A stretch of DNA of 64,000 nt from Oculina patagonica. Lineage: Eukaryota. Both the position numbers and the translations under genes were made by a program. Positions within the stretch are counted from its first letter, which is position 1. Every line of letters starts with the position of its first letter. The notes below the pieces were generated by a model that searched no databases, was not told the DNA's origin, and saw nothing but the letters and a program-made list of their open reading frames with translations. Positions 1 through 24,039 of the stretch are shown here, one piece after another. The DNA lies in NCBI RefSeq assembly GCF_052425735.1, contig NC_135767.1, forward strand, positions 18,848,001 to 18,912,000. The letters are read 5' to 3'.

Positions 1-1605
1 GGGACCTGCTCACTTCTCACTGATATTCAAACAAAGCAGTCAAAAAGGCTTTTAAAACAAGACGGTTCTTTTTATTTGGAAAAGGTTTGTTATCACTTAA
101 TTTCTTGTCAGATCTCTATATGTAGGCCACTACATTTGACTTAATGCCTGATATTTGACAACTGTCTGGCATTAATTAAAACGAACTTAAAAGTGTCCTC
201 GCTATTTCCATGCTTCTTAAAAAAATGTATTGACTCTCATGTAGCTTTCCCCAATTCAGGAATATGATTAATTAAATTAACTGTATAAAAACGTTTTCGT
301 GTTTTGGTATTGACCTGTCGTAGCATAAAGCTTATATTAAAGCGCTAAACGTAAACACTTCTGCAAGAGTAATTTTTTTTTCATCCTAGAAACCAAGGAA
401 AAGAAATATCAGTGCTCAAAGTTCTCTTTTTCACTGGTTTAAAATTTTTAAATTTTTAAAACACTCTTTTATCACTTTAATTATCGACTTGTCAGTTTTT
501 TGGTGTTTGTTTCCTTGTATGTCTTCTTTTTTTTTTTGAGGGGGGGGGGATGTCACTTCTCTCTAATATTTATTTCAAGTTTTCCTGAATTAGTATCATT
601 CATTTTAAAGGTTGTCTCTCCTGGAATTCCAAATTCACCGGGTAAGTAATGTTACTTTTTAGTTAAGAAGTTTAGGGGTCGATAGTACTTAATTTTGGTA
701 TAATAACGCTTTGGATATTATTAAGCGATAATAACTAATGATAAAAGCACACAAACCAACACCCAATCAATAATTTGTCTCTGTTGGAAAATTAAAATTG
801 GTGAGTGGGGTGGTAAATATGGCTGATCTAGTTTATAATTTTAACGATAAAAGGTGTACATTTAGTAACAGTGGTAAAATTGTAAAATATTTCAATATTT
901 TGGGTCATGTTCATGAAAACCAATGATTAAAAATGTCTTATTCACGTAGGCAACACTCGATTTTCAGCGGTGCCCTCGTGCCAGGCCCTACACAGTCAAT
1001 CTTCTTTTCCTTCCTCGGGTGTTTATTGGATTGATCCTGATGGTGGGACCCAGACAAACGCCTTCAGGGCTTACTGTGATATGGACACTGATGGAGGAGG
1101 TTGGACCCTAGTATATAGCTATACATTCACAAATTATGTTCATTTTCAAGATAACTCGAACGCGATCACACCAAGACCAAATTGGCCAGCAGTCTCTAAA
1201 GTAGATGTTCCCGTCTCGACAACTCCTCCCCTGAACGAAACAGACTACAACGCCATAAACTTCTCGCAGTGGAAACAACTTGGCAGAGAGATCCTGATCA
1301 AAAGCAATATAAACAACTGGCTGATATGCCATCCGGGAACTGGAAGTTTGGTTGATTGGCAGGACGGAAACATCAGCTGTCGTGTTACTAAACACGTGAC
1401 GGATACGTGTAACGGAACTGCGCCGCCTTGGGACTTTAAATCGAGTAATGCCTATGGGCCGAGATTCAGGACTTCTGCTAATTACTATTATTTTGATGGA
1501 TACACAAGGAAAAACTGGCCAACTCATGATCCTTGTGGAAAAAATGCGGGAAATCATGTGAAAAATGTGATTGATCCACATGGGAACATTTTTATCCGAG
1601 CATAA
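1..1605 (+). CDS. PAN/apple + fibrinogen-like (YCDxxxxGGGW) secreted protein, paralogue A (5'-truncated by the window edge)
   Basis: Exons <1-84 (GTCSLLTDIQ...SFYLEK|gt), 611-641 (VVSPGIPNSP-G, ag/gtaag) and 950-1605 (GNTRFSAVPSCQAL...GVYWIDPDGG...YCDMDTDGGGWTLV...PHGNIFIRA*). Splice phases 0 and 1 join in frame, and the structure matches paralogues B-D. Confidence 0.85.
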
Positions 1606-4470
1606 GAAACTATAGTATCGTCGAATACAACGCAATAAAGTTCCCAGAGAAAGTGTAGCTTAATATTGATCTTTTGAAACCTAGCATGTTTATAAGAAAC
1701 ACGTTTCCCTCCAACATGCATTGTTCACATAAGGTTGTTCAATTCCAAACAACTGCCATCGATCAGGTCACTCAATGCACCGCCTGATGTATATTAAACT
1801 CTTTACGCCGTGAAACATGATGTCTCATTCGTGATAAAAAATGATCAAAACTAGTTTACTGGTTTACATATTTGCAAACCAGAACGTATGTTTGCTGTTT
1901 TATCCAATACTGATAGCATCAAATATTTTAAATCTGCTTAATGATAAATATCAATTTGCATTAATAGTAATGTTAGCTCTGAAGAGTTGGCGGTTTATCA
2001 AGGCATTCTCGTTCCTGAATTCTCATAACCTGTCTTCTTGTCAATGTACAATATCGTAAAGAGAATATAATTATAATTTGCAGTTAATGAAGGAGTTAAT
2101 AAGCTTTTCATTATTCTAACTGATAGTTGAAACTTATAAAGCAGTGTATCTTGTATGCTTCTTTTTCTCGATCTTAGCTTCCAGTCCACTTTCTCGGTAA
2201 ATTGCGCATGCAGATTACCCTAACCGGAAACAATTTTTGTCAGCCGTGTAATATCACACCTACTTTAAAAATAAACAAAGGAAAATGTGTTGCGTGAAAC
2301 TCGAGTAACTGTCCGCACAATCTCTGTCTTTTAAATATAGTATATTAAAAATATAGGGTCAGTTCGTAATTTGACCATCACAAGTTAACAAAAATTTATT
2401 TTACCCCAATATTGTATATAAAGCCGTGCAAGTAATTATAACGAACTAGTAATCCATTGTAAATGGTGACTGTTTACTCGCTTAGCATAGTGTAGATAAC
2501 TATTGTAATTAGCTTTTGTGTGTATTGTGGGTATTGTATGTGTGTTTATTGCAATAAAAATACAGGGCAAAAGTAATGTCTTAGCTGATAGCATACCCCG
2601 AGTGAAAAAAAAAAAAAAAAAAATACCCCGAGTGAGTGAAAGTCAACTTATAAAAGATACTTTCTTATTGAAGATAAGTCGCATTTGAAGTGTTTATTAT
2701 TGCTTGGTAATCGAACAGAATGAGATATGTAAATGATTTTAGATCATGACACTCTAAATAACGTGATCTCGGAAACGAGAAATTTCCATCAAAATTATGA
2801 TTTTTTTATTCAAAACATGCACATGCCAAATAGTAAAGTTTGCAAACCTCAAAAATGCTTTTAAAGTACAACAAGATTCTATTTTAATTTATCTGCTGTT
2901 GTCCAATTTCAGTTTAATACTTCATGATGTTTATGACAACATAACAAAGGTTTATTGAAACAGAACATCTAAACAAACTAAACATAAAAAAAATTAACAT
3001 TGCAAACCGTGTAATTATCGCCAAAAACAAAGTTATTTGTCATGACAGCTGCAAACATTGGTAATTATTAATGCCATGTTAATTATTTAGCAGAAAAGGG
3101 ATCTGTTACAAAGATCCGCATAACACTTTGTCAGAAGACTTTATGAGTTTAAAGAGGCCTTGAAAATGATACATCAAGTAAAGGTATGAATTGTTTTCTG
3201 TAATTTGAAGACAAGATGGTCCTATATTTCGAAGCAGAACAGTCAAACTATTTATAAACCTAAATCAGTACTAAAAAAGTTAAGACTTCATTTCACACGT
3301 CATGTTTTTGTATAAATGCAATTCATATTCTGTTTATTGCTTATTTTTTTGTATTTTCTTTTATTTTTTGGAGTTTAAATAAAGTTTTGTTGTAAGACCA
3401 ATTGCAGTGCTACATTGAACGAATTACAATATTTCACTAAACCTACACAACGTAACGTACTGACAAATCAAAGCAAAATTTGGTGAAACTAAATTAACTA
3501 AAAAAACTACCTCCGACGTTGGCATTTTCAGGTTTAGGTTTACTTGCTACAAATAGAAAAGGTGACATATAAGAAGAATCTAAAGAGAATTCAGTCCAAC
3601 ATGAAATAAGAGCGATCAGAGGCTCCCATTTCGTGTAATGGCATATAATTAAGATTGTTGCTCTCTTTCTCTCAACGAATATCCTTGCTTATAGATATAA
3701 CAGAGTACTTAAAAGTATTAAAATGGAATTTAGCCTGTGGTAATTTTCACAAACATACAAGCGGTAAGCATATTTATTCAATTTAACATTCTCGAATTAG
3801 GATCAAACCTTGCCAAAAGGTCACAATCGTGTTGTAACCTATATTTTAGAATGAACGAAATCGCATCGATAGCAGTAACAATTTAAATAAATTCCATGTC
3901 CAGTAATATATGTATCACATATCTAAAACAATAAAAACTCTCAAACAAGTTACCCCTCAGATCAATTTTAATTTTCTGAATCGCTGTTGTAGTTTACAAT
4001 AAGTACATTTATTTCCATTTAACATTTCGTGGGTGTATTTTTCTGAATTTTGTTTTCCAAACTGTTCACATGATTACGTAACAATTGAACAATAAAAAAG
4101 CAAACCAAAGAAAGTCATTCTATCTTTTACTATTATTTTCAATCAAAGTCTTATTAACTATTTCTCGCTTCATCTGGAAACCAAACACAAAAAATAGACG
4201 AGAATAATACAGGCAGTATAGAAATACTACCGACCACTTACAATAAATATACTTTTGAGTCTATCTTTTGAGTATGGAAATTTGATGAAAGACTCTCGCT
4301 TCGTGTTTGACGCATTGCAGTATATAAATTTTTTTTAAGCCAGGCCAAATGAATGACCTTACCTATTACTAAAACCTAAAAGATAAGTGATAAATAATAA
4401 TTCTGATTCGTGTACTTGAACCTTTAGTCCGACAATTTTCGTGACCTAACACATTTCATGTTTTTTTCAG

Positions 4471-7089
4471 ATGTTGGCAGTTGCAGTGTTTTTCCTTCTC
4501 TAAACAACAAACACAAGAGCTGAAGGTCGACAACAAGCTGTGTTCGAAACAAAGAACAACTCTGTTTTATCCGACAAAAGTCCTATTTCTGAAGTAAGAT
4601 CAGATTCGCTGATGTCCTGTTCACAGCGATGTGCCAGAGACAAACGATGCAAGAGTGCTAATTTTATAACAGACGAGAGAAAGTGTTCTCTACTGGACAA
4701 AACGAGGAATACTCATTCACGGCTCTTTGGGAAACAAGTCAATTCAATTCACCTGGAAAAGGTAACAGTAAATAGTGATCTGCCATATACGAATTTGCAA
4801 GTATAACGAGCATCCAGAATGAAAAGTTGCCACATAATCACGATCACTCACTCACTGCCCATTGTGCCCACTGGCACGTAGGGCAGCAACAAAGGTCCTC
4901 CACTGCTGTCTGTCTTTGGCCAGCTGTTGGATGGTGTTCCAGCTTTGGTTTAAGCCCCTCAATTCTGTCTCTACTGTACGTCGCCATGTATTCTTGGGCC
5001 TGCCGCGCTTGCGCTTTCCTTCGGGTGTCCAGTATAGTGCTGTCTTTGTGATGGATTCGTTTTCCTTTCGGATGACATGGCCAATCCACCTCCAGCGCCG
5101 TTGCATAATAATAGTACCCATGTCCTCACGATATCTATACAAAAAAACCTTTTTGAGGCCAGGAAAATGAAAGGGGATCTTAAACTGTGTAAACTAGAGA
5201 TCAGAAAACATTAGACAAGTGTCATTTTCTAACCGTTGCAAACATATAGCAAAGTACATGTATTTTTTTTTAAGCTTAACAGCGATTTTTTTACTATTTT
5301 CTACGAAATTCTGCACTCTTGTAACAAACACACGATTAAACCTTATCCTTGCCGTGAGGTTTGGAATTTTTTTTCTAAACAAAGTCAGTACAAACAAACA
5401 GGACATGCACATGTAAAGATGGCTAAAAATCCGCCCACCGAGCACCTATAGAGGGAAGGGATGGATAATTAGCTCAGTATCGTGGGGAAGTAAAATTACA
5501 GATACTAGGAAAAAGCAACATTCGTATCAGGACGACGCAAGTTGATAAGTTGCATAAACTGAATAATAATTAACTGATTTTACTGTCAGGTGGGTTAGAA
5601 TTTCCCATTTTAACCGGGTAAAAATAACACCATTAATGTCATTAATTATATTCACTAATAATAAGTGCAATTTATATACCAACTAATGTAAAATAAATTT
5701 TAAGCACATTACAAAAATATTTGTTTAACCATGTTACTTTAGTTATCTGCTTTAGAATCTGTTTAGCCTGATTTCTTAATAGACATTTAATATTTATATA
5801 AGAACCATTTTGAAATTAGTCTTTTGACGAAAATCAGGTCTTATACGTGAATTTTCTTATTTAAAAAAGTGTATTGTATTCTTTATAAAACAACCTTATT
5901 GGCGCAAGAATTACTTAAATCTCTTCTGAAACGAGCTGAGAGGTTGAATTCTTAACACATTAACGTAAACTAAACTTACCGGTATAATAATTTTTATTTG
6001 GTAAGCGATTATTGTTAATGTTCAAATAACACGAGTCTTTGTTTTTGTCGTTTCGCAGATTAATTCAGACCTTGGTAAGTTAAGCCAGAATTTATTTAAA
6101 ACTTTCTTTATTTTTAAATCTCTTTTTTGTACTTCGTACTACTGTACTCATAGTTTTAATCAGGCGGTTGTGAACTCGAACCCTCTCTTCCCCTTTAACT
6201 TCAACTCACAATCTCTACCCTTAAAATATTGTTATTTGTAATTTGCTTAGATTTTATCAATTGACTAGGCATGTCACCTTCAACTATACTGAGCAAAACA
6301 ACTGTATTGTAATTATTTCAGCAATCACAAATTATTCTTCATCAAAACAACTCTTGTAAACTTTTTTCTTGTAAAAGTTCTTGTAAATTTCCTATTCATC
6401 GTTTACATACAGCTTCTTGTTTCTGTAACATAGGATCAACAAAAGAGCTGGCTGTTCCCTCGTGCAAGGCCCTCCCCCGAGCTCTTCATCCCAGTGGTGT
6501 ATATTGGGTTGACCCAGATGGTGGATCCCATGCCAACGCGTTCAAGGTTTACTGTGAAATGGATACTGATGGAGGAGGCTGGACTCTAGTGTGGAGTTAC
6601 ACGTTTACCGACTACGAGCATTTTTCGGCCACCACAAACGCTGTTACTCCAAGACCTAACTGGCCAGCAGGGAATTCAGATGTCCCAATATCTACTTCCC
6701 CACCACTGAATGAAACCGACTACAATGCCATGGAATTTCCGTTGTGGCGGCAGTTTGGAAAGGAGATCCTCATCAAAAGCAACATCAACAACTGGGTTGT
6801 TTGTTCACCGGATACAGGAAGTTTGGTTGAATGGCAAAATGGAAACGTCACTTGTAAGATTGTCAAGCGCGTAACTGACATGTGTGCAGATGGGCCGCCG
6901 CCGATTTCATATTTCACAAGAAATAATTGCGGAGCAAACTTAAAGCGTACCATTGGGGGAGCATCATCTTATTATCATTTTGAAGGTTGCACAGAAATTC
7001 GCCACCCCGCACATGATCCCTGTGGTCTGAATCAGAACAATGGCCTGAAAAATGTGGAAAATCCTCATGGGAATATTTTCGTTCGCTAA
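4471..7089 (+). pseudogene. PAN/apple + fibrinogen-like protein, paralogue B; in-frame TAA in the signal peptide (null allele, young pseudogene or base error)
   Basis: Exons 4471-4761 (MLAVAVFFLL*TTNTRAEG...CSQRCARDKRCKSANF...CSL...HLEK), 6059-6074 (INSDL-G) and 6434-7089 (GSTKELAVPSCKAL...YCEMDTDGGGW...PHGNIFVR*). The stop is at 4501-4503; the rest of the frame is intact. Confidence 0.7.
4846..5142 (-). mobile_element. 3' end of an RTE-clade LINE (C-terminus of the RT ORF), 5'-truncated, in intron of paralogue B
   Basis: Translates as RRWRWIGHVIRK...ALYWTPEGKRKRGRPKNTWRRTVE...LAKDRQQWR, typical of the RTE ORF C-terminus. The stop is followed by a short GTGA-type tandem tail. Confidence 0.8.
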
Positions 7090-7136
7090 CAACTGTTTGT
7101 TCATTCAAGATCAAATCGAACGTTTCTTCAAAGTAA

Positions 7137-7690: not shown

Positions 7691-7693
7691 CAA

Positions 7694-9313: not shown

Positions 9314-9324
9314 CATATTTATTA

Positions 9325-10813: not shown

Positions 10814-13800
10814 ATGCTGTTGGCTACACTTGTATTTATACTGTCTTTGGCGGAAAAAATGAGAGCAAAAGAGAATGGCGTTTTCTTTAAAATCGATGAA
10901 AACGCTTTTCTTTTTAATGAAAACAGCATTTTTAATGGCAAGGCAGATTCTTTGTTGTCCTGTTCACAAATGTGTGCCAAGCAAGATGCTTGTAAAAGTG
11001 CAAATTTTATAGCAAGCCACGGAACTTGCTCACTTCACACTGATGGTCAAACAGAGCAGGCAGAAAATATTTTAAAACGAGACGGTTCTTTATATTTGGA
11101 AAAGGTTTGTATAATGCGATCAGAACCTTGTCAGAGTCTCAAGATCCATTTTAATGGGAAAAAAAATAAATTTAAAATTTGTATAGGCCAATATGTTTAA
11201 CTAAATGCCGGATATATGACAACTGTCAACATGACATTAATTAAAAGAACTTAAAAACAATTTGTACTCGTTATTCAACGACTATAATTCTAAGATTCCA
11301 ACCAATTTTTATGCTTCTAAAAACACCAGTAGTTGTTTCTTACTCGATAATATGATAAATTTATGTATGTATGTATGTTGTTGTTATTGTTGTTGTTGTT
11401 TTTTCATGTCGATTTTTAGTCCGGTCTGAATTAAAAAGACGAATTTCAATCAAAACCATAAATATGGGATTAATATGAAGACAGCACCAAGCGTAAACAT
11501 GAAAACATCATGAAAACGACGGCTAAAGGCAGGGCTCGACATACATGCAGATGTTTTCAAAGCCCCGTCCGGTAGTCCTGTTTGGAAAGTGACTTCTCAT
11601 GCTCACTTGCCCAGTAAGCAAGGGCACAGGAAAGCCGTACCGACTAAACTATAGTTACAAAAAATACAATAATAAACTAATGTAATCACGTAACTGCCCC
11701 ACGCATAGCATAGAGTTGCTTGCCCGAAGGATAAGCTTGAATTCACGTTTTAACCTTTTAAAATTTTGCCCTTTTAAATTTCAATTTAAATTTTTTTCTT
11801 AAAAACCTTTTATCGGGATTAAAATTTACTATCAACACCATTTTGAAAAGATGGAAATACTTTTTACTTTATTTGCCTTCTATTTGTTTGATTTATTGTA
11901 TAAGGTTTTTCTATTGGTGTCACTTTTTACTAGTTATGATTAATCCTTAATAATTAACATTCCGTTTACAGGTTGGCTCGCCAAGAATCTCAAATTCACC
12001 GGGTAAGTGCAGTGATTATGAGTCATTTTTGAATGACCCATAAAAAAATAACATAATTTTGGTTAAAATGCTAAGAGATTGATAGTAACTAACTTCGGTG
12101 TCACGCCTTTGAAAGCAATAATACACTCTTTTTTTAAGCCCATACATTTTCTTGAATTTTGGGGCAAATCTCAGCCTCAACGTTCTTATAAAAATGGTTC
12201 TAATAAAATAAAAGAGTGTACTTAACGACGAAAGAACTCAAACCAGCACACAGTCAAAAATTTTCCCAGTACGAAAATTAAAATCGGTGAGCATGGATGC
12301 CATAAACAACGATTTATTCCCTGGGCCCGGTTGTTCAAAACTCCGATTAAACTAACCAACGATTAGGCCTAATCGTCGATTAAAATCACTAACACCGGGT
12401 TAGCTAATCGGTGGAATTGAGAACGTTGTTCAAAGCCCGATTAAAGGCACGATTAGTTAATCGTTGATTAACGGTTAGTACTTAGTGTAAAACAATTTGT
12501 ATTGTCTCGCTAATCGACGTTTAGTATCCCAAAAAGTAATTCTCCTTGAGTAAACACTGCGATGGTTCCCAATATGGCGTCCGCAGTGTCGCATGTGGTA
12601 AAAGGAAAACAGCTGTCGCGACGTAAAACTAACTGGTCCGATTCGAAAATAATCATTTTTCCAGTCGCATTAAATCATAGTGATGACTAGCATTTGGGAA
12701 ATTGGTTTCAGAGCGTGACCACGCTTCGTTAGACTTTCTCAAAGGGCGACTTGGTGCAAGTCTAACGCTTCGTAAATCTGCCTCTACGAGGTTTGTAATT
12801 TACTCTGAATTTACTGGATGTATTGAATTATTTGTACAATTATAGACGCTCTGCCGCGGCGAGGCCGTAGTTCTTGTTTATTTTGTATTGTATTTATTGT
12901 TTTATAAAGCTTAAAATAAAGCTTACACAGAAAAGAAATGTACAGCAAGAAGTAAATAAAACTATTTTAACGTTAAAGGTCGTAGTTCTTGATCGCAACA
13001 AGCCAGTATGTATGGTGTCGTTATATTGATAACTTCGCAGGCGTCTTTGTCTCACAAACAACAAGTCCGCCATTTTTCCAGTTTAATCGGCCGATTAGTG
13101 AGTTAATCTTCAACCGGAGCAGTGTTAAATTTAACCCTTAGTTTAATCGTTGATTAGCGCTAATCGGGCTTCGAGCAACGCAATCTAATCGCGCGTTAAA
13201 ATTTAATCGCCGATTAGCATATTTAATCGCTGATTAGCGCTAATCGGAGTTTTGAACAACCGGGCCCTGGTGTACAAGGTAACCTTCTTAACATATTTTA
13301 ATAATTTGGGTCATGATTAAAAAACGTACTTTATGTTGTAGGTACTAGTGAATCGTCAGCCCTCTCGTGCCAGGCCCTACACAGCCAATCTCCTCATACT
13401 TCTTCGGGTGTTTATCGGATCGATCCTGATGGTGGGTCCCAGACTAACGCGTTCAGGGCTTACTGTGATATGGAGACTGATGGAGGAGGCTGGACTCTAG
13501 TGTGGAGCTATACATTCACAAACTACGGTCATTTCAAGTATAACTCGAATACAATTACACCAAGACCAAATTGGCCAGCAGACCCTAGATTGGATGTTCC
13601 CATCTCGACAACTCCCTCATTGAACGAAACAGACTACAACGCCATAAACTTCTCGCAGTGGAAACAACTTGGCAGACAGATCCTGATCAAAAGCAACATC
13701 AACAACTGGTTGATATGCCATCCGGGAACTGGAAGTTTGGTTGATTGGCAGGACGGAAGCATCAGCTGTCATATTGCTAAACACGTGACGGATACTTGTA

Positions 13801-13994
13801 ACGGGACCGCACCGCCCTGGGACTTCATTTCGAGTAATGCCTATGGACCGCGATTCAGGACTTTAAAGAATTACTATTATTTCGATGGCTACACGGGAAG
13901 TCACTGGCCTACTCATGATCCTTGTGGAACAAACAACGGAAATCATGTGAAAAATGTGATTAACCCACATGGGAACATTTTCATTCGAGCCTAA
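10814..13994 (+). CDS. PAN/apple + fibrinogen-like (YCDxxxxGGGW) secreted protein, paralogue C (intact, ~324 aa)
   Basis: Exons 10814-11104 (MLLATLVFILSLAEKMRA signal-like; CSQMCAKQDACKSANF...CSL PAN pattern), 11972-12002 (VGSPRISNSP-G) and 13342-13994. A possible extra upstream coding exon is 10669-10698 (MLHHFFPKKA|gtaagt). Confidence 0.88.
12324..13266. mobile_element. PIF/Harbinger-type non-autonomous element in intron of paralogue C
   Basis: Perfect 26-bp TIRs GGCCCGGTTGTTCAAAACTCCGATTA, a CTG target-site duplication, and subterminal CGATTA/TAATCG repeats. Confidence 0.85.
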
Positions 13995-14655: not shown

Positions 14656-14696
<41 letters not shown>

Positions 14697-14907: not shown

Positions 14908-15189
14908 TTAAGTTACTGAATAAATCAGGAAATAAAATTAAAAAAATTGCTTATTTGTGATGAGGGAGGGGCAAATTACTCATGCCAACAGAAAACCACT
15001 CATTGCATGCAGCCGTCTACTATTTTCTTACGCGGAAACAGAACGTCTCTTTTCCGTGGTAGCAAAACATCGTTGTCAAGGCAACAGTTAGAGCACTTAT
15101 CACAACCCAGCTCTATTCGAAGCCCGCTAGCTGGTTGTGCACTTAGTAGCGTGAACATTTATTCCACCACAAGCATGTTTGGTCTTGTC

Positions 15190-15390
15190 GCTTGGTTTTT
15201 GCCGTGAGCTTATTAGGTTTTGCCTTGAGGTTATCTGGTTTTGTATTCCGTTTTGTCGTGAGGGTTTTATTTTTGAAGTTAGCTTATCAGGTTTTGCTGT
15301 GAGCTAATTTGGTTTTGTTATGAGGTTAATAGGCTTCATTTCCGTGAGCTTATTTGGTTTTCTAGTAAGGTTTTTGGTTTTGTGGTCCTC
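15190..15390 (+). repeat. Degenerate minisatellite (GGTTTTGCCGTGAG-like units)
   Basis: Repeated GGTTTTG(C/T)..TGAG(C/G)TTA motifs at roughly 20-25 bp spacing. Confidence 0.55.
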
Positions 15391-15797
15391 AGTTGCTTTA
15401 ATTGAATGTCAACTGGCAAAAAAGGGTTTTAGAACATGGGACCTTAAATCACTCATTAGTTCGAAATGACTTGTTTGAGACGGACGATTAAAATTATCAT
15501 TAAAGTTGTAACGATTGGCGCCTTGCATTACACGTCATATTTTGGAGCAAATTTTCTACAACGGATTAATTAGTTTTAGACAGAACATTTGTTTGAGACA
15601 GAAGGTTAAACATTTTATTAAAATTAAGGTTGTCATGATTGACGTTATATTATTTGCACGTCGTATAAGTTGGAGAAAATTTTCTAGAACTAATTATTAA
15701 AGCACACAAGCGCACACTGCACACAAAACAACAGAAGTAGCCAGAAGCTATCGACATCGGTTCCGAGATTATTATTCGTACAAAACATCAAAACATC

Positions 15798-18700
15798 ATG
15801 GTAGGACAGTTATTCAAAAACTTCAACTTTTTTTATTTATTTTTTTTTTAATGTGTAGCTAGTGACCTTCTAAAGGTTGAGTCATATTTTCCGTTAAGTT
15901 ACCTTCATTTCCTTTGGTTTTCCGCCCGGGGGAAGAACTTAACCTAACGTAAAATTTTTAAACTTGTGCTTTTTCTTTTCGGCTATCACATCCAAGCCCC
16001 ATGTATTCAGATTAAGTAGTATATTCTTTTGGGACGTAGGTTTAAAACTCCAAATTTTGAAATTTTAGAAGGGTTGTATGAGCTCAATTAAAGCTCTTAC
16101 CGCCAGGCAGTTTTGCAGGTGTTTGAAAGCCAATATATAACCTTCAAATGCAAACGAAAAAAGCTAAAACAAATAAGCAATGTATTACTTATTAAGTTTT
16201 ACAAGCTCTTTAAACATTTGGAGTCAATTTGTAAATAGCATGACGTTTTCTCTATTCGAGTTACATGCTAGTGACGCAAGACGTAAGCAACGATTCGCCT
16301 ATAGCGGTACACAAAGCCTGTTCAACGTTTACAGCGAAAAATGTGTGAAAATGGTTCTACAGAAGGAATTAGCTCATGTCTGTTCAACGTTTACAGCGAA
16401 AAATGTGTGAAAATGGTTCCACAGCAGGAATTAGCTCATGTCTGTTTGTCTTCTTCATAGACGCTACAGAACACAGCTGTATTGATACTATCCTTGGCAG
16501 TATCAATAAAAGCACAAGAGCATGACGTTTTCTTCAAGATCGAAGAAAACTCTTTTTTATCTGATGGAAACACTATTTGGAATGGAAAAGCAGACTCCTT
16601 ACTGTCCTGTTCACAAATTTGTGCGAGACAAGATGCTTGTAAAAGTGCAAGTTTCATGACAAAAGCAGGAGCATCTTCGCTTCACAGTGGAAAACAGAAA
16701 AAGCATAATGGCACCTTTTTGCAAAAAGAGAACTCTTTTTATTTGGAAAAGGTATGTTTATAAGCAAAGAACGAGGACATCCTGTAGTAAAGGTGTATTT
16801 TGCTTTAGTAAAGTAAATCATTTAGGATAAAACTTGACGACGTAACCTTTGTGCCTCACCATTAATTTTGAACATTTGTTAAACCGCTGTGTTTCCGAAG
16901 TTGCTTTAGTAAGCTATCCTCTTTTCATAATTCATCAATTGACTTATTATAAACCTGTTTTGTTTTTATTTTTTTTGTTTTTTTCAGGTTACTATAGCAA
17001 CACTGCCCACAATTAACGGTGAGCGAAGCAGCTTTTTGAAAAACCTTGTACGGATATTTCTTTTAAAGTTATCATCATCGTCATCATCATCATTATTATC
17101 AAATTTACCAATTATTATAGATAATAAATTAAAGGAAACAAGAACATTGAGAAGCTTGAGAAGCTTAAAATCGGGCGCTTCGCCTTGAAAGGCAGGGTTC
17201 AGTACAGCGGAAACCACGAAGCAGTTACTTAAGTAGCACTCAGTCCGACTGTGTTTGTGTAAGTCACAGGGCTTGCATGAGCTGTATTAGTGTGCATAAT
17301 ATAATATCTAGAACGTTGTCGAGATTGCATTATTACTTAATGACATGATGGTTTCTTTTCAATTTATAAATGTATCTCACACAATACAAATAAACGATTG
17401 AAGTAGACGACTAGACAATGTAAAGTTTTAAGACTTAGCAAAGTGCAGTGTATTGGTAATACTGAAGGTGCGGTTTCACCTGAAGGTCGTGTGCTTTTCG
17501 GTATTTTCCAGGCATTGCACTTTGATGGGACAGTACTACAACTGTTTACCGGGGAACTACTATTGTCAAGAAAATGATCACAACTTGTTGATGAATGATT
17601 GAACATTTGTTTCATACCATTACTGTAATAGCAATTGATGAAGGCTTTAGTCCTGAACCAAAGTATAAGGACTGGGAAATACTGAAACCCATTATCAGCC
17701 ACCTTAAACGGAAATATCTTGTTGGTGTTTCAAGGAATCCAAGGAAACTTCACTCATCCCATGTATCTATGTATTGCGGTATTTTGTAATTTTTTGAGTG
17801 ATTTTTGGGGATGTTTGGCAGGTGATAGTTTTTTTAAAAGAATTAGTAAAATTTAGACAACTAAGAAATATTGAAAATTTAATGTGAATTTAACATTGGA
17901 ATTTGAAGTTAGAAATTGGCAGACGGACACCAAACAGTCCCGTGACATCCTGGAGTGTTTTTGCATGGGGGTCAACTGTGTGATGATGTTTCCATTTTTT
18001 TCTTCAATCCCCACTGATAAAGAACTGTTGTTGGTGTTATGTTGGTGTTATCACATGTCAAGCCTTTAACAAGGTATGAAAGAACACAAGGATTTAAATT
18101 ATTCTGGTGCTCAATTTTTGCGTAACTAAAATTAATGTTACTCAAATTCCTGATGGATTCTGTCTTAAACTGTTACGAGCTTAGTATTTCCAAATTATTG
18201 CATGTCAATGTAAGGCAAGACAAGACATGCCTTGGTTCTTATGTAATTCTCTTAAAAACACATAAGATATTGACTATAATTTTGTCTGTGCTATGGCAAT
18301 TCACAGTGGGGTGGTCTTGATGTGTCTTTAACTTGTAGACTGGACTGGACTAGTAAAACGCGGACTAGTAAAACGCGGACTTGTAAAACGCCTCTAGACA
18401 CTTCGAATTCCTTGGCCACAATCATCTTACGGCTCTCTTCAATACATAATGTCTCAAAAAAACAGTAACCTCAGAAAGAAGTCAGAAGCAAATAAGGTCG
18501 AAAGACCGAATTTGAACATATAACGGCAAATGTTCTAATGTCACGAACGTAGGAGTCGTGTAGGCCCGTCACCTTTATTTACCACATACTGCCCCCAAAT
18601 TAAAACAGTACCCTCAGAAAGAAGTCAGAAGCAAATAAGGTCGAAAGACCGAATTTAAACATTTAACGGCAAATATTCTAATGTCACGAACGTAGGAGTC

Positions 18701-21700
18701 GTGTAGGCCCGTCACCTTTATTTACGATTGACTGTTGATTTCTGGACGGGCCCCGTTCTACCTCGTGCGAGCAATACAAACGACTGCACTCAACAGACGT
18801 CAAGTAGTGGAAAGAAAGAAACATATGCACACAACTCATAGCATCAATCCCGTTGTTTTAGTAGGGGTTTGCAGAACGAACATGTGCTATACTGCAAAAA
18901 CATCTCCACGCTAAAACAGACCATAGAGTGCTCAAAAAAGCTAGAAATATGCCGTCGAAGAAACACACAAGAGCTTCAAACACAAATTGTTTCGCTCGCT
19001 AAACCGTTTAGTTTTATCCGATTTACAAGCGCTTGTTTTACAAGTCCGCGTTCTACAAGTCCGTGCTTAACAAGCCCTCGTTTTACAAGTCCGCGTTTTA
19101 CAAGTCTGCGTTTTACTAGTCCTCGTTTTACAAGTCCGCGTTTTACTAGTCCGCGTTATACTAGTCCGCGTTTTACAAGTCCGCGTTTTACTAGTCCGCG
19201 TTTTACTAGTCCAGTCCAGTCCTCGAAATACAGTATGCCAAAACTCCCCGCCCTCTAAAGATAAGTCCTTGACGGTTCTTGTCGTTTTTCGGTGCCTATT
19301 CATCTTCGGCATCTTTCTCATCCACCTCTCGTTCTGTCCTGTGTCTGTCATCACACGAAAGAAAAGCTGATTCTCAAAAAATCTGCCACAAAAGGAAATT
19401 GACAAAAACAATATGAAAACCATATATCGAAAGTTTCTTATTCTAAAATTTTATCATACGTCTTAATTCAGAGCTACAAAGAAGTTCCTCCTTTTGAGTT
19501 ATTGATACTGTTCTTACAGTACCTCTTTCCACTAGCGAAATTTTACAAAATTCCTTCGCGGCGAAAAGGTAGCGCGAATCCAGAACAGACTCCAATCGAG
19601 AGTGGGTTAATTCTAGATTACTATTAATTAACTATTACAACATTCATTTTTAAAATAGTTTCCCAAGCCGACTAAGCTAACTAAACGTCGAGTGTATCTT
19701 TCAGTAAACAAAACATGCCGTTATGACGCCGGAAATCCAGCTCACGCATACTATACCCCGTGACTCACGCAAACCTCCGACTTACGTGCTACTACAGTCA
19801 TTCCTTTCTAAACATTTTTTTTTGAACACCACCGTACCTTTCTACCCAAAAAACTCATGAAACCGCCCGGTTTTAACCTGTTTTAACCTTTCAAAAATTA
19901 GAGCGTTCGAAACTAAATAAGATCCGTAATCACAAACAACATACAGCCGTTTACCAGCACTCTTTAAAACTCCTGAAACCCTTCAAAATCAGGCAAAATA
20001 AATCTTTGAAATAACCTTTATCAATGTTTCTTATTTTTTATTCAGTTCTATAAAATGCCTTTCATACACTACTGTCAAACAAAAATTTCAATTTCCTCAA
20101 AGTTTCAAGACAAAAGAATAACAAATATTTCGTGCACAATGTAATTTGATTAAGCCAATATTATCACGTCTAAAAATACTTCAAGCAATTCAGTGAAAAC
20201 CCGTTTTTTTTTTCGTATCAACGAAAACCACTTTCGAATAATCAATACATGAAAATAACAATAAGATCAAAAGGAAGAAAGGAACCTTTCTAATTATTTG
20301 AAGACTTTCAAAGCCGTGATATTATGCATCCAATCCGCGATAAAATTTAATTACAACAAAATCCAAGTTCTCATTTTGAATTCCATTTTTTTCAGTTGAT
20401 ACCTTTATCCAACTTGTGAAAAATTCCATTCAAGTTCCTATTAATACTGTACATTCCCAATGTTTTGCTCAGGTCTTCAGAAGCGTCTTACTAACCAAAT
20501 CTAAAATAATTCCAAAACATGCTGTACAAACATTCTACTCTTTGTGACAAACGACTTGACGACCAATTGTTCAGAAATGAAAATCGACACAGTTCTTGCT
20601 AAATAAAAAAAACGTTTTACGGCGGAGTCAGGCTCAAAAAATATACCGCAAGATCACACCCCCATTCATAGTCAGAAACCAGCAAACCATCTAGTTTGCT
20701 AAAAAAAAAAACACTGCGTGACATCAATGACGTTACCTTTTTCATTTACAAAAATAACTTTAACTTGTCAAAGTAAGTGCAATTTCACAATGGTGAATAT
20801 CAGTACAGTATGGGGCCCAGTTCTCGGCCACTTTGTGTTTAACGCGTTTTTTCACACTCCAGTTGAATCAAAAGAAAAAGGTATTTCCTTCAAACGATAG
20901 ACTGATTCATGTGCTTTAAGTATCTTGAGTTTGATCGTTCAATTCGATATAGAAAGCTCACACGTCGAGTTTACGCGGAGGTAGGTGAATTTGCATTCCC
21001 GAAAAAGTTGTTTGTTTACGGCTCCAAATTCATGGATGTAGTTAAATTCGTATTTTATCCAAAAGCCCCCACCATACGAGCTAATTTTTGGCATGTGCAA
21101 CGTAGAATAATTCAGCTTTCTGCTTTAGTTAACTTTTCGTTGAACCGTTGTATTTTTTGGTCTTAATTTACTTCGAAATTTTTTCTTGCGACGTTTGCGT
21201 ATTTGCCAGTTCTCGGCCACCCTGCTCGCTATCACAGCTTAGCGCTTGGTTTTTAATATAATTTCATCTGCTGCTGCCAGAATGAAAGAAATAAATGTTT
21301 TAAAAATAAAGTTCAATCTTATCTCTAAGTTTTGAGCTGACTCTTGTCTTGTCTATTATTTCTACAACACCTAAATCTTTCAAGACCTTTTCACTGCAAA
21401 ATAAACCATCTAAATGCACGGGTCACACAACGCGGTTTTGCCAGAACCTGCACATAGGCAACTAGGCGCGTTAAAATCCTTCTTTTCTAAAGTAAAACAA
21501 AGCATCATAAAAATAATTTGGGATCGATATAGTATAAATAGGTTTACAGAGTGATTTTATGACTGTGAAAATTAATTGAGCATTTTTTTACAGATAATTA
21601 CGCACAAGCTTTTTAGTGGCCGAGAACTGGGCCAAGGTGGCCGAGAACTGGGCCCACAAATGGAGCTTTTATTTTTATTATTGCTTGGGCAAATTAATTT

Positions 21701-23615
21701 TTGACCGGTCGATAGCTTTACACCAAAAAGCTGAATAATGTAGCTAGCTCTGGGAGAAATTTCAAGTTCCTGCGGTTCTTCTGAGGTAAGAAATACAAGT
21801 TTACGTCAAAAGTGGCCGAGAACTGGGCCAAGGTGGCCGAGAACTGGGCCCACAAATGGAGCTTTTATTTTTATTATTGCTCGAGCAAATTAATTTTTGA
21901 CCGGTCGATAGCTTTACACCAAAAAGCTGAATAATGTAGCTAGCTCTGGGAGAAATTTCAAGTTCCTGCGGTTCTTCTGAGGTAAGAAATACAAGTTTAC
22001 GTCAAAAGTGGCCGAGAACTGGGCCCCATACTGTACTTTGCCCCGTAAGCTTTTTTCTCTGTCCTTCCGCCGAAGCAAAAAAACACAACCTGATTACACA
22101 TTAACCCAAAAGTCGACCAAGTGTGCCTGCAACGATTTCCTGTCAAAACTAAAATGAAAACCATTGCGGTATGCGTCACCCGTAGCGGTTTTGTAGCAAC
22201 CCTAAGCTATCCCCGTCTTTTTGGCCGCGCCAGGAGACTACGCTCTAGGACGACCAAAGGGTAAACTATAAATCGGCCACGCCCGATTAATAAATCACGT
22301 TATGATAATCTTGGGAGGCGCGGTGGCCTAATGGTTAACGCGCTGGACTCCAGATCGAGCGGTCCGGGTTCGAGCCTGGTCTCGGTCATTGCGTTGTGTT
22401 CTTGGGCAAGAAACTTTACTCCCATAGTGTCTCTCTCCACCCAGATGTATAAATGGGTACCGGCAAATTAATGCTGGAGGGTAACCCTGCGATGTACTAG
22501 CAACCCATCCAGGGGGAGTAGAAATACTTCTAGTCGCTTCATACTACAGAAACCGGGATAGGCCTGGCCTGTATGGGCCACTAGGCGCGAAGCAGACTAT
22601 ACCTACCCATCCATGATAATCACGTTAATGCCAGTTGCCACTAAATCGAAGAAACCACCCCCTCCCAAAAAAACAGTTTGCTAAAGTATAAAAACATCAC
22701 ATGCTAGGGGTAATTATAAACCCAAAAGAGACAAAAGCAACATGGATGGGTAGAGATTTCGAGGGATTACAAAAAGCGTACTTGAGAATTTTAAGCTATC
22801 TAGTTCCAAATGAGCTATTTGTGACGTAGGAAGGTCCAGAGAATGATGGTTCTGATTATGTCAGTCGGATATTATTTATTTCAACTTATTGACTGCTACG
22901 ACTGACAAGACATATCAATACCTTTGATGAACAAGTCATTATACTTAATATAGGTACCACTCAATCTTCAGCTGTTTCCTCGTGCAAGGCTCTCCGCAGT
23001 CATTATCCCCATCCTTCATCGGGTGTTTACTGGATTAATCCCGACGGTGGGTCCGAGAGCAACGCATTCCAGGCTTACTGTGATATGGAAACTGATGGAG
23101 GAGGTTGGACTCTAGTGTGGAGTTACACCTTTACTGATTACCAAAATTTTTGGACTGGCGCAAACGCGGTTACTCCAAGACCCGACTGGCAAGCCGAGTC
23201 TGATGTCAATGTTCCGGTCTCTACTACACCGCCATTGAATGAAATCGACTACAATGCCATGGCATTTACGTTGTGGCGTCAATTTGGAAAGGAGATCCTC
23301 ATCAAAAGCAACATCAACAATTGGCTGGTTTGTTCACCGGGCACAGGAAGTTTGGTTGAATGGAAAAATGGGAAAGTCCTTTGTAAGATCTTCAAGCGCG
23401 TGAGTGACACGTGCCTATATCGACCACCACCTTCAACGTTCAGAGGTCCTGGGTACTGCGGGCCACTCTTTAGTGAGGGACCCTCTAGTACACATTACTT
23501 TTACTTCGATGGTTGCAAAGGAATACACCTGCCCACACATGACCCCGGTGGACTAAACGGGGACAATGGTTTGAAAAACGAGAAAAATTCCCACGGAAAC
23601 ATTTTCGTTCGCTGA
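15798..23615 (+). CDS. PAN/apple + fibrinogen-like secreted protein, paralogue D (~328 aa; two conserved Cys lost)
   Basis: Putative ATG-only exon 15798-15800 (ATG|gtagga, low confidence), then 16461-16751 (TLQNTAVLILSLAVSIKA...CSQICARQDACKSASF...FYLEK), 16988-17018 (VTIATLPTIN-G) and 22954-23615 (GTTQSSAVSSCKAL...YCDMETDGGGW...SHGNIFVR*). The last intron is 5.9 kb and filled with TEs. Confidence 0.75.
16318..16441 (+). repeat. 62-bp tandem duplication just upstream of the paralogue D PAN exon acceptor
   Basis: CTGTTCAACGTTTACAGCGAAAAATGTGTGAAAATGGTTC.ACAG.AGGAATTAGCTCATGT occurs twice with 2 mismatches. Confidence 0.9.
18338..19239. mobile_element. Non-autonomous DNA element with 15-bp subterminal repeat arrays and an internal 143-bp-period duplication
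   Basis: Left end GACTGGACTGGACTAGTAAAACGCGGAC is inverted relative to the right array (TTTTAC[T/A]AGTCCGCG)n-AGTCCAGTCCAGTC at 19021-19221. The internal direct repeat is 18459-18582 / 18602-18725. Confidence 0.7.
20806..22033. mobile_element. Tc1/mariner (pogo-like) non-autonomous element with IR/DR-type ends
   Basis: TA target duplication and TIR CAGTATGGGGCCCAGTTCTCGGCCACTTT. The motif GTGGCCGAGAACTGG recurs internally, and there is a 196-bp tandem duplication at 21615-22006. Confidence 0.85.
22313..22606 (+). mobile_element. tRNA-derived SINE with MIR/CORE-like central region
   Basis: A box (TGGCCTAATGG), B box (GGTTCGAGCC), CORE-like TTCTTGGGCAAGAAACTTTACTC...GTATAAATGGG and a short TACC tail. 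Related copies lie at 50461, 58486 and 63540. Confidence 0.8.
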
Positions 23616-23915
23616 GATCCGTCGTTTAAGTCTTGGTCAAGTTTCTCGCTGTATGGCACCCTCCTTCACATGGACAACAATATAGTACCGGTAGAACTGG
23701 ATAACTTTTCGCACTCATAAATACCAGAATGCTCGTTTTATCATGTTTAAACTCCATTTGTTTTCAGGATGAACAGAACATGCACGAACCTGTCCCCCTC
23801 CCCGTTAGTTAGCCACAATTCTTTAGCTGAGTGTAAGATACGTTGGCGCCTTTCAAATTTTCACCGAGGCCGATTTTCACCAAAATTTTCACCAAAACCT
23901 ACCAGTTTTTGTTGG

Positions 23916-24039
23916 AGTAACAGTTACTATTATTTCGATGGCAATAAGTCGAAAGACTGGCATACCCATGATCCTTGTCTCCAAGCAGACCATGTGAAAC
24001 CATGTGATCCCACATGGCAATATTTTCATCCGAACCTGA
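23916..24039 (+). pseudogene. 3' relic of a fifth PAN/fibrinogen-like paralogue
   Basis: Reads SNSYYYFDGNKSKDWHTHDPC...HVK, then after a frameshift PHGNIFIRT*, matching the C-terminus of paralogues A and C. Confidence 0.75.

What the first reader, a model, noticed from the sequence alone, without database searches (positions are those of the whole stretch)
1..24039. Tandem, diversifying family of secreted PAN/apple + fibrinogen-module proteins with an unrecognised C-terminal domain (candidate recognition/lectin system)
Seen: four paralogues plus a relic share one architecture, including a PAN exon of exactly 291 nt in B, C and D. After the fibrinogen-type SC...GVYWIDPDG...YCDM.TDGGGWTLV module they lack the canonical fibrinogen-domain motifs (QRR.DGS..F, FST.D.DND, GGWW). 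Instead they carry a conserved ~150 aa block (YTFT.Y, TPRP.W, STTPPLNE.DYNA, ILIKSNINNW..C, GSLV.W, YYF.G, HDP.G, HGNIF.R). Known: intelectins use the same N-terminal module ahead of a different carbohydrate-binding domain, and PAN domains mediate protein/glycan binding. Inference: an uncharacterised birth-and-death family of secreted recognition proteins (immunity, symbiont or allorecognition). I cannot confirm novelty without a search.
Basis: partly seen in the sequence, partly recalled or inferred. Interest (0 to 1): 0.78.

Follow-up and report, generated by a model that had tools for sequence, protein, structure and literature searches.

The report
Coral PAN plus fibrinogen-like gene array
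This stretch of the stony coral Oculina patagonica holds the edge of a very large tandem family of small secreted proteins that join a PAN/apple domain to a divergent fibrinogen-type binding domain. The domain is an unstudied branch of a known fold, and its closest non-animal relatives are in soil and marine Myxococcota bacteria.

Summary
Window 1-24,100 (+ strand) carries four paralogous genes and a relic.

The "unrecognised C-terminal domain" is not a separate domain. An AlphaFold2 model (pLDDT 96) shows one compact 218-aa fibrinogen-related (FReD) fold. It aligns end to end with intelectin-1 (Z 9.8), fibrinogen beta, ANGPTL3 and ficolin (Z ~9). Curated HMMs (Pfam, NCBIfam) cover only its first ~50 residues.

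Only gene A looks fully intact and transcribed. B has a stop in its signal peptide. D lost its ATG and two cysteines and is a hybrid of two subfamilies. C is open but unannotated.

The Oculina genome holds at least 40 full-length copies, about 33 of them in a 450-kb array around this window. PAN plus this domain also occurs in sea anemones, an octocoral and an annelid. The domain alone, at 35-48% identity, occurs in a few Myxococcota, which suggests old inter-domain transfer.

Variable loops evolve near neutrality (dN/dS ~0.8), so diversifying selection is not shown. The ligand is unknown. This scan has met the same family in other windows of this genome.

The parts
1..84 (+). Gene A (RefSeq LOC144627973): last 84 nt of the signal-peptide+PAN exon; the rest lies upstream of the window
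   Evidence: 100% tblastn match to P0001 and P0083 residues ending ...SFYLEK, followed by a GT donor
611..641 (+). Gene A linker micro-exon, 31 nt (VVSPGIPNSP plus 1 nt)
   Evidence: Exact peptide of P0001/P0083, flanked by ag...gt. Depth arithmetic suggests 19 nt of an RNA-type contig lie here
950..1605 (+). Gene A terminal exon: complete 218-aa FReD-like domain, stop included. An internal AG acceptor before 1150 gives annotated isoform X2, which lacks the N-terminal module
   Evidence: 100% identical to P0001 56-273. Agrees with the family majority at every column that is at least 85% conserved. AF2 pLDDT 96. Acceptor read
4471..4761 (+). Gene B signal-peptide+PAN exon, 291 nt, with an in-frame TAA at 4501-4503 (codon 11)
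   Evidence: No alternative base reported at 4501-4503 in two DNA runs that have depth in that bin
6059..6074 (+). Gene B linker micro-exon, 16 nt (INSDL plus 1 nt)
   Evidence: AG/GT-flanked candidate that matches the INSDL linker of paralogue P0102
6434..7089 (+). Gene B terminal exon (subfamily 2 FReD-like domain)
   Evidence: Profile E 4e-93. Groups with P0125, P0097 and P0112
10814..11104 (+). Gene C signal-peptide+PAN exon, 291 nt; ATG is its first codon
11972..12002 (+). Gene C linker micro-exon, 31 nt (VGSPRISNSP plus 1 nt)
   Evidence: AG/GT-flanked, similar to gene A's linker, correct phase
13342..13994 (+). Gene C terminal exon (subfamily 1). Open, but with A72T and P94S at positions that are 89-99% conserved
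   Evidence: No database protein is at least 97% identical to it
16461..16751 (+). Gene D (RefSeq LOC144629109) signal-peptide+PAN exon, 291 nt. ACG replaces the ATG and the fourth PAN cysteine is lost. The head is subfamily 1 type
   Evidence: P0107 match. PAN is 57% identical to C and 39% to B
16988..17018 (+). Gene D linker micro-exon, 31 nt (VTIATLPTIN plus 1 nt)
   Evidence: Exact peptide of P0107, ag...gt flanks
22954..23615 (+). Gene D terminal exon, subfamily 2 type, reached across a 5.9-kb intron; C196G and P210S
   Evidence: Clade with B, support 100/99
23751..24059 (+). Relic of the 3' third of a terminal exon (YYYFDG...THDPC, subfamily 1-like)
   Evidence: hmmsearch E 7e-6, profile positions 165-200; alignment

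Best explanation
**What it is.** Window 1-24,100 is one edge of a ~450-kb tandem array on an Oculina patagonica chromosome. Each gene encodes a ~320-aa secreted protein with four parts. These are a signal peptide, one PAN/apple domain, a short linker encoded by a micro-exon, and one compact ~215-aa globular domain encoded by a single exon.

**What the last domain is.** It is a complete but strongly divergent member of the fibrinogen-related (FReD)/intelectin fold. Its first ~50 residues are the shared SC...YCDM.TDGGGWTL module. The remaining ~160 residues are the B and P parts of the same fold. They have family-specific motifs, three cysteine pairs and no canonical FReD calcium or acetyl-site motifs.

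**How it most likely works (inferred, not shown).** The proteins are extracellular binding, lectin-like molecules. A conserved scaffold, including an invariant WPTHDPCG segment, carries a few loops that differ between paralogues (residues ~64-70, 78-86, 155-178, 185-190, 198-201). The PAN domain gives a second binding or anchoring surface.

**How the array turns over.** It evolves by duplication, exon-level recombination and decay. In this window A is intact and transcribed and C is open but unannotated. B has a premature stop. D is a subfamily-1 head fused to a subfamily-2 tail with damaging changes. A tail relic follows D.
For: **Gene models.**

**Identity of the genome.** P0001, P0083 and P0107 are NCBI Oculina patagonica proteins that match the window at 93-100% identity. 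Their contig length of 23,458,249 equals that of C10, which holds the window.

**Fold.**
- AF2 pLDDT is 96.2 and pTM 0.93.
- VIA-align gives Z 9.8 to intelectin-1 (182 residues aligned), 9.1 to fibrinogen beta, 9.0 to ANGPTL3, 8.8 to H-ficolin and 5.3 to the procollagen C-propeptide. The next unrelated fold scores 4.4.
- Foldseek hits in PDB and Swiss-Prot are all FReD or intelectin proteins and span residues ~1-217.

**Sequence models.**
- Pfam COLFI and Fibrinogen_C, and a profile search of PDB sequences, match only residues ~4-56.
- NCBIfam NF040941 GGGWT_bact scores 68.7 bits against a cut-off of 30.

**Family size.** There are 96 matches in the genome. About 40 are full-length and stop-free, and ~33 of these lie at C10 18.75-19.20 Mb.

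**Variable and conserved parts.** Entropy profile and dN/dS.

**Defects.**

**Hybrid D.**

**Binding context.** Bacterial homologues sit beside Laminin_G_3, CBM_4_9 and Big_2 domains.

**Transcription of A.** Contigs of runs X1 and X2 cover only 949-2560, start at the acceptor, and do not cover B.
Against: - No ligand, localisation or expression pattern is known for any member.
- The canonical FReD calcium and ligand motifs are absent, so binding chemistry cannot be carried over from ficolins or intelectins.
- I had no model coordinates. Placing the variable loops around one pocket is therefore inference from their position in the sequence.
- A homotrimer prediction gave no verdict.
- The runs taken as RNA are labelled only 'RNA?' and are contigs, so the splicing evidence from reads is indirect.
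- B and C have no matching database protein and may be silent.
Confidence: 0.65

Rival explanations
1. One reading: a dedicated, actively diversifying germline repertoire of immune, symbiont or allorecognition receptors, in which positive selection drives the loops apart.
For: There are many paralogues with loops of high entropy on an almost invariant scaffold. FReD and intelectin relatives are innate-immune lectins. An earlier scan note on another window of this genome (s1-291612) reports signs of selection for diversity.
Against: Pooled pN/pS in the variable patches is 0.77-0.89 and never clearly above 1. This holds even though the patches were chosen for being variable. Only 31 of 165 pairs exceed 1, and the core is at 0.25. 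There are no expression data under challenge. Half of the copies here are damaged.
Confidence: 0.2
2. Extracellular-matrix or skeletal-organic-matrix component: the domain acts as a structural or matrix-binding module, like a collagen C-propeptide or tenascin head, rather than as a non-self sensor.
For: In the red coral Corallium rubrum skeleton proteome, protein CR_6 is among the most abundant organic-matrix proteins. It is 687 aa, carries InterPro COLFI + fibrinogen signatures, has no Gly-X-Y repeats, and its best hit is an uncharacterised Pocillopora protein. Its peptide EIGEEILIK(S) at residues 582-590 falls where this family has LGREILIKS (PMC7853314). NCBI names some members 'collagen alpha-2(I) chain-like'.
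Against: Assigning CR_6 to the family rests on one 9-residue peptide plus its domain signature; its full sequence was not compared. The family is also present in non-calcifying sea anemones and an annelid. No collagen helix or known assembly motif is present. The fold match to the C-propeptide is the weakest in the superfamily (Z 5.3).
Confidence: 0.2
3. The last ~150 residues are a new domain of unknown fold fused behind a short fibrinogen-type module.
For: No Pfam, NCBIfam or PDB sequence profile matches beyond residue ~56.
Against: The confident model is a single globule. Structural alignments to FReD and intelectin chains run from residue 1-6 to 217-218, with 160-182 aligned residues and Z 8-10. 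The whole 215 residues are inherited as one unit in animals and bacteria.
Confidence: 0.03
4. Secreted venom or cnidocyte product: FReD proteins used as toxins or prey-directed factors.
For: Snake-venom ryncolins are among the fold matches. A Nematostella matrisome paper reports fibrinogen-related proteins expressed in mature cnidocytes and suggests they may be venom components (PMC12549020).
Against: Nothing links this subfamily to cnidocytes. The Nematostella FREPs were not shown to belong to it. The bacterial and annelid homologues argue for a general binding module.
Confidence: 0.05

Closest known systems
Intelectins / X-type lectins (human intelectin-1 4wmq, Xenopus XEEL 4wmo, lamprey LSVL 7e1e)
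   Same: They are the best sequence match of the N-terminal module (profile E 5e-11 and 1e-10). They are also the best fold match (Z 9.8, 182 residues; TM by query 0.54-0.55). Both are secreted, lack a collagen or coiled-coil stalk, and depart from canonical FReD motifs.
   Different: Identity is only ~15%, and there is no sequence match after residue 56. The domain is 218 aa against ~280 aa, so the intelectin-specific insertions are missing. Intelectins have no PAN domain. Their calcium and diol-binding residues could not be mapped here.
Canonical fibrinogen-related domains (ficolins, tachylectin-5A, FIBCD1, angiopoietins, tenascin, invertebrate FREPs; Pfam PF00147)
   Same: Same overall fold and size (Z 8-9 over 160-175 residues). 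Same first disulfide and YCDM..GGGWT strand. They are often found in expanded tandem families.
   Different: PF00147 matches only its positions ~3-47. The GGWW and FST.D.DND calcium/ligand motifs are absent. The cysteine pattern differs, and the domain is encoded by one exon.
Bacterial 'fibrinogen-like YCDxxxxGGGW domain' proteins (NCBIfam NF040941), especially those of Myxococcota
   Same: The coral N-module scores 68.7 bits on this model, higher than on the Pfam models COLFI (37.3 bits) or Fibrinogen_C (29.6 bits). A subset of Myxococcota proteins shares the whole 215-aa domain at 35-48% identity, with all six cysteines and the TPRP.W, SNIN.W, WPTHDPCG and G.I..R motifs.
   Different: The NCBIfam model covers only 46 residues. 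The bacterial proteins are large multidomain proteins (Laminin_G_3, CBM_4_9, Big_2, MopE) without PAN. The full domain was found in only 6 of 401 sampled Myxococcota genomes.
Corallium rubrum skeletal-matrix protein CR_6 (PMC7853314)
   Same: Same COLFI + fibrinogen signature without a collagen helix. One peptide matches the family motif at the expected position. Its best hit is an uncharacterised stony-coral protein.
   Different: It is 687 aa with a long, different N-terminal part. Membership was inferred, not tested on the full sequence.
CniFL, the cnidarian ficolin-like proteins
   Same: Another tandem family in this genome whose proteins carry a fibrinogen-type head (earlier scan note s1-293943).
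   Different: As described in that note, which was not tested here, CniFLs have a collagen stalk, three Ig domains and a Caspr-type head. The proteins here have a signal peptide, PAN, a linker and the GGGWT-type domain only.

Membership tests
Fibrinogen-related domain, Pfam PF00147 (canonical FReD) | Match over most of the 221-position HMM | tested here: not met
   All 89 family members hit PF00147, but the window copy and every full-length relative scanned match only model positions ~3-48
Fibrinogen-related domain, Pfam PF00147 (canonical FReD) | Three-subdomain FReD fold | tested here: met
   AF2 pLDDT 96. VIA Z 9.1 (fibrinogen beta), 9.0 (ANGPTL3), 8.8 (H-ficolin) and 8.4 (FGL1) over model residues ~1-218
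Fibrinogen-related domain, Pfam PF00147 (canonical FReD) | P-subdomain calcium/ligand motifs (D.D-type loop, GGWW) | tested here: not met
   Regular-expression scan of the four copies finds none outside the N-terminal module. No conserved acidic cluster lies in residues 150-190
Intelectin / X-type lectin | FReD-like N-terminal module plus the intelectin-specific ~280-aa fold | tested here: inconclusive
   The module matches (E 5e-11) and gives the best fold Z of 9.8. However, only 182 of 283 intelectin residues align, at 15% identity, and there is no sequence match beyond residue 56
Intelectin / X-type lectin | Three calcium sites and exocyclic-diol binding residues | not testable with these tools
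   No residue-level structural alignment or model coordinates were available
Fibrillar collagen C-propeptide, Pfam PF01410 (COLFI) | Full-length COLFI match behind a Gly-X-Y triple helix | tested here: not met
   COLFI matches only model positions ~29-70 of 233. Fold Z is 5.3. No collagen repeat is present in any gene model
NCBIfam NF040941 GGGWT_bact | Score above the curated cut-off over the 46-position model | tested here: met
   68.7 bits against a cut-off of 30, model positions 1-46, residues 10-55 of gene A's domain
PAN/apple domain, Pfam PF00024 | Score above the gathering threshold, with the four core cysteines | tested here: met
   48.1, 33.8 and 26.0 bits for B, C and D against 21.4. 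Four cysteines are present in B and C; D has lost the fourth
CniFL (cnidarian ficolin-like) | Collagen stalk plus Ig domains ahead of the head domain (architecture as given in earlier scan note s1-293943; not checked against the literature) | tested here: not met
   The gene models and annotated proteins P0007, P0083 and P0107 have only signal peptide, PAN, linker and head

The most novel reading that the evidence does not exclude
The head domain is a fourth, unnamed branch of the fibrinogen/intelectin/collagen-propeptide superfold that moved once between Myxococcota-like bacteria and an early animal. The tree hints that the direction was into animals, before cnidarians and bilaterians split. 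In this reading the domain was then fused to a PAN domain and, in stony corals, expanded into a germline array of 40 or more lectin-like proteins with paralogue-specific loops.
Probability: 0.35. Interest if true: 0.65.

Novelty: new variant of a known kind. Interest (0 to 1): 0.45.

Why it matters
Fibrinogen-type lectins are a main tool of invertebrate innate recognition. Corals lack adaptive immunity, yet they must sort symbionts, pathogens and neighbours.

This finding defines a large subfamily that no paper found here describes. It is clearly delimited and has a confident structural model. It has a conserved PAN partner that reaches back to the cnidarian-bilaterian ancestor, and a concrete set of variable loops to test.

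The close bacterial homologues matter for two reasons. They raise a testable case of gene transfer between bacteria and animals for a fold usually treated as an animal invention. They also supply easily expressed proteins for finding the ligand.

It is not a new kind of system. The fold is known, the proteins are already labelled fibrinogen-domain proteins in databases, and diversifying selection is not shown.

Tried and rejected
- **Homotrimer.** A prediction of the head domain as three copies gave score 0.00 and no verdict. It is not evidence either way.
- **RNA evidence.** X14 and X15 proved to be genomic DNA, since they cover introns and intergenic DNA. X1 and X2 behave like RNA but are contigs, so no joints were listed for genes A or B. 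The single joint, 4764 to 6051 in X14, has non-canonical AC..CG ends and was not used.
- **GON domain.** A protein-atlas lead to PF08685: only 1 of 89 members hits it, at E 0.066. Dropped.
- **Stylophora skeleton proteins P14 and P18.** They are a coadhesin and a vWA protein, not this family.
- **Literature.** Searches for coral + PAN/apple + fibrinogen, for fibrinogen-like + Myxococc + intelectin, and for YCDxxxxGGGW found no description of the family.
- **Positive selection.** Pairwise Nei-Gojobori estimates gave no dN/dS above 1. Site models and recombination screening were not run.
- **Unlabelled representatives.** Cluster look-ups of ten more returned a name for only one.
- **464-aa ORF at 46002-47393 (-).** No Pfam hit and only weak atlas hits.


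Full report
**Source of the window.** The window is G000:C10:18,848,001-18,912,000 of a 529-Mb genome. NCBI proteins of Oculina patagonica match it. P0001/ACROYT_G034088 and P0083/LOC144627973 are 100% identical over their exons here. P0107/LOC144629109 is 93-98% identical. These proteins come from a contig of 23,458,249 bases, the same length as C10. The window is therefore a stony-coral chromosome. GC content is 31-46%.

**Observation.** All family matches in the 64 kb lie on the + strand between 1 and ~24,100.
- Four terminal exons are open: A 950-1605, B 6434-7089, C 13342-13994, D 22954-23615. Each scores E 1e-92 to 1e-101 against a family profile.
- The ORF at 23751-24059 is a real relic, at E 7e-6 over profile positions 165-200.
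- The signal-peptide+PAN exon is exactly 291 nt in B (4471-4761), C (10814-11104) and D (16461-16751), with AG and GT boundaries. ATG is the first codon of this exon in B and C. Pfam PAN_1 is significant in all three.
- The phases of the PAN exon (ends in phase 0) and the terminal exon (starts in phase 1) do not fit each other. The gap is filled by a micro-exon:
  - The linker peptides VVSPGIPNSP and VTIATLPTIN of the annotated proteins lie at 611-641 (A) and 16988-17018 (D).
  - Equivalent AG/GT-flanked micro-exons lie at 11972-12002 (C, 31 nt) and 6059-6074 (B, 16 nt). B's linker INSDL is the same as in paralogue P0102.

**State of the copies.**
- A agrees with the family majority at every column that is at least 85% conserved.
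- B has an in-frame TAA at 4501-4503, inside the signal peptide. Two DNA runs with depth in that bin report no other base there.
- C is open throughout. It has A72T and P94S at positions that are 89% and 99% conserved, and no database protein matches it at 97% or more.
- D has ACG in place of the exon-initial ATG, so RefSeq uses an upstream M. It lacks the fourth PAN cysteine and carries C196G and P210S.
- D is also a hybrid.
  - Its PAN exon is of the A/C type: 57% identical to C against 39% to B.
  - Its head groups with B and the other subfamily-2 heads, with support 100/99. In every other full-length protein compared, head and tail types agree.
  - Its second intron is 5.9 kb, against 0.3-1.3 kb in A-C.
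  - I read this as a fusion of two neighbouring genes after a deletion (inference).
- The relic behind D is subfamily-1-like.
- RefSeq isoform X2 of gene A uses a canonical AG just before 1150 inside the terminal exon. This removes the whole N-terminal module, and such a product would probably not fold (inference).

**What the 'unrecognised' block is.**
  - Pfam COLFI (E 2e-9) and Fibrinogen_C (E 8e-7) match only residues ~7-56. This is true of all 89 aligned family members.
  - A family profile searched against all PDB sequences matches only residues 4-56, best to lamprey LSVL, XEEL and intelectin-1.
  - NCBIfam's 46-residue GGGWT_bact model matches at 68.7 bits.
- By structure it is not a second domain.
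  - With an 89-sequence alignment, AlphaFold2 gives one globule with mean pLDDT 96.2 and pTM 0.93.
  - VIA-align against 48,161 PDB representatives gives intelectin-1 Z 9.8 (182 residues, rmsd 3.9), fibrinogen beta 9.1, ANGPTL3 9.0, lamprey fibrinogen 9.0, H-ficolin 8.8, FGL1 8.4 and fibrin gamma 8.1. All of these span residues ~1-218. The procollagen C-propeptide follows at 5.3, and unrelated TLDc folds at 4.4.
  - Foldseek against PDB, Swiss-Prot models and AFDB clusters lists mainly FReD and intelectin proteins, and in PDB and Swiss-Prot only those. Family members themselves appear at TM 0.92-0.97 and are already named 'Fibrinogen C-terminal domain-containing protein'.
- The terminal exon therefore encodes one complete, highly divergent FReD-superfold domain at ~15% identity to solved members.

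**Size and spread of the family.**
- A profile search of the Oculina genome gives 96 matches. About 40 cover the whole domain without a stop. About 33 of these lie at C10 18.75-19.20 Mb, so the window's four copies are part of a ~450-kb array.
- A second cluster lies at C10 13.74-13.77 Mb. Two-exon variants lie on C7, C9, C5 and C13.
- Public proteins give more than 1,070 close hits. All named ones are stony corals and none is characterised.
- An exhaustive search gives 4,903 representative clusters at E below 1e-3 and 163 below 1e-30.
- Named members outside stony corals are from Exaiptasia, Actinia, the octocoral Dendronephthya, the annelid Owenia and the brachiopod Lingula.
- PAN plus this head also occurs in Exaiptasia (with an EGF domain), Actinia, Dendronephthya, Owenia and an unnamed low-GC animal-type contig, L058. 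The architecture therefore predates the split of cnidarians and bilaterians.

**Bacterial homologues.**
- Twenty loci encode the whole domain at 35-48% identity over residues ~10-217. Most are labelled Myxococcota or Deltaproteobacteria MAGs (Haliangium, Kofleriaceae, Nannocystales). Contigs reach 1.9 and 9.3 Mb. One is a 3-kb contig binned as Acidobacteriota.
- They sit in large proteins with Laminin_G_3, CBM_4_9, Big_2, bacterial TSP3 and MopE domains, so they are not coral contamination.
- The full domain was found in only 6 of 401 sampled Myxococcota genomes. This is a lower bound, because only seven candidates per genome were scored.
- In a careful maximum-likelihood tree of 93 domains:
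  - All 24 sequences known to be eukaryotic fall in one clan of 49 rows, with support 98/95.
  - The bacterial sequences form at least five deep lineages separated by well-supported branches.
  - The midpoint root falls among the bacteria.
  - One probably bacterial sequence (P0143, on a densely packed 7.6-kb contig) sits unresolved at the base of the eukaryotic clan.
- Bacterial heads are as similar to coral heads (38-46%) as annelid or brachiopod heads are (46-48%). Vertical descent from the common ancestor of bacteria and eukaryotes is therefore implausible, and inter-domain transfer is the likely cause.
- The tree shape hints at a single transfer from bacteria into an early animal. The root is not established, and the reverse direction is not excluded.

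**Variation.**
- Among 37 stop-free Oculina heads, entropy is concentrated in residues 64-70, 78-86, 155-178 (with indels), 185-190 and 198-201. Residues 24-63, 71-77, 90-135, 179-182, 191-197 and 202-217 are nearly fixed.
- Pooled Nei-Gojobori pN/pS is 0.24-0.30 in the core and 0.77-0.89 in the variable patches. Only 31 of 165 pairs exceed 1. The patches were chosen for being variable, which biases this value upward.
- This fits loops under weak constraint. It does not demonstrate diversifying selection.
- The earlier scan note on the same array 249 kb downstream (s1-286725) reached the same view. Another note (s1-291612) reported selection for diversity in a different cluster.

**Transcription.**
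- Splicing of the PAN exon, micro-exon and head is what RefSeq models for A and D.
- Runs X1 and X2 cover only 949-2560 of the stretch laid (560-6559), apart from a repeat at 4844-5127.
- One 291-nt contig aligns from 1220 back to exactly 949, with 19 letters left over. The depth of 0.62 in the bin 560-759 equals 19 letters at that contig's depth of 6.5. This fits the micro-exon being joined to the head (inference).
- Gene B is not covered by X1 or X2.

**Function.**
- Shown here:
  - a secretory-type N-terminus;
  - a PAN domain;
  - a FReD-fold head without the canonical calcium or acetyl-site motifs;
  - a conserved scaffold with paralogue-specific loops;
  - carbohydrate-binding neighbours in the bacterial homologues.
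- Inferred: extracellular, probably multivalent binding of glycans or matrix.
- A matrix role has one piece of outside support. Corallium rubrum CR_6 is an abundant skeletal organic-matrix protein with the same COLFI + fibrinogen signature. It yielded the peptide EIGEEILIK(S) where this family has LGREILIKS (PMC7853314).
- I found no paper describing this subfamily.

**Verdict.**
- The structural interpretation is corrected: there is one divergent FReD-fold domain.
- The functional interpretation remains a reasonable but untested hypothesis.
- The new element is the close Myxococcota homology.
- This is a new variant of a known kind. The scan has already found it in several other windows of this genome.

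Noticed in passing
window 16461-23615: Gene D (RefSeq LOC144629109) joins a subfamily-1 PAN exon and linker to a subfamily-2 head across a 5.9-kb intron. It looks like a fusion of two neighbouring genes after a deletion. A subfamily-1-like tail relic follows at 23751-24059.
   Followed up: partly
window 4844-5127: A multicopy repeat in gene B's first intron. Depth reaches 11,800-27,500 in DNA runs, against ~50 nearby. An ORF on the minus strand (4852-5142) reads ...RWRWIGHVIRK...KRGRPKNTWRR..., which from memory resembles the C-terminal tail of non-LTR retrotransposon reverse transcriptases. Pfam found nothing.
   Followed up: partly
window 19022-19212 and 21615-22025: Tandem repeats inside gene D's long intron: a 15-nt unit x 12.7 copies (reads as RFTSP repeats in one frame) and a 196-nt unit x 2.1 copies at 99% identity. 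A 143-nt x 1.9 repeat lies at 18459-18725 and a 62-nt x 2.1 repeat lies just upstream of D's PAN exon (16318-16446).
   Followed up: no
window 36337-37137 and 41688-42458 (+): Two paralogous open exons that match Pfam Rost ('protein rolling stone', E 2e-21 and 2e-16). This is a tandem pair of multi-pass membrane protein genes downstream of the array.
   Followed up: no
window 46002-47393 (-): A 464-aa open frame with no Pfam match and only weak atlas look-alikes (best 0.82, S100P-binding protein clusters). It may be a disordered protein exon.
   Followed up: partly
window 60317-60649 (+): An exon matching the C-terminal end of the sodium:solute symporter family (PF00474, E 6e-6).
   Followed up: no
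window 1150 (gene A): Annotated isoform X2 (P0083) splices the micro-exon to an internal AG acceptor in the terminal exon. This deletes the SC...YCDM.TDGGGWTL module in frame. The one RNA-type contig seen runs straight through this site.
   Followed up: partly
P0121 (Phalansterium solitarium transcript, 3,103 aa): An amoebozoan giant protein carries 14 repeats of the N-terminal GGGWT module alone, without the rest of the head. Several other proteins of 1,000-4,500 aa show the same pattern.
   Followed up: no
contig of P0143 (7.6 kb, no DNA held): Two adjacent genes with this head (550 and 529 aa) sit on a densely packed, bacterial-looking contig next to Peptidase_M18 and metallophosphatase genes. 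In the tree P0143 sits at the unresolved base of the eukaryotic clan. It may be the closest bacterial relative of the animal genes.
   Followed up: partly
window 4764 to 6051, run X14: One DNA contig skips 1,286 bases between gene B's PAN-exon donor region and its micro-exon, with non-canonical AC..CG ends. It may come from a paralogue or a deletion allele rather than from splicing.
   Followed up: no
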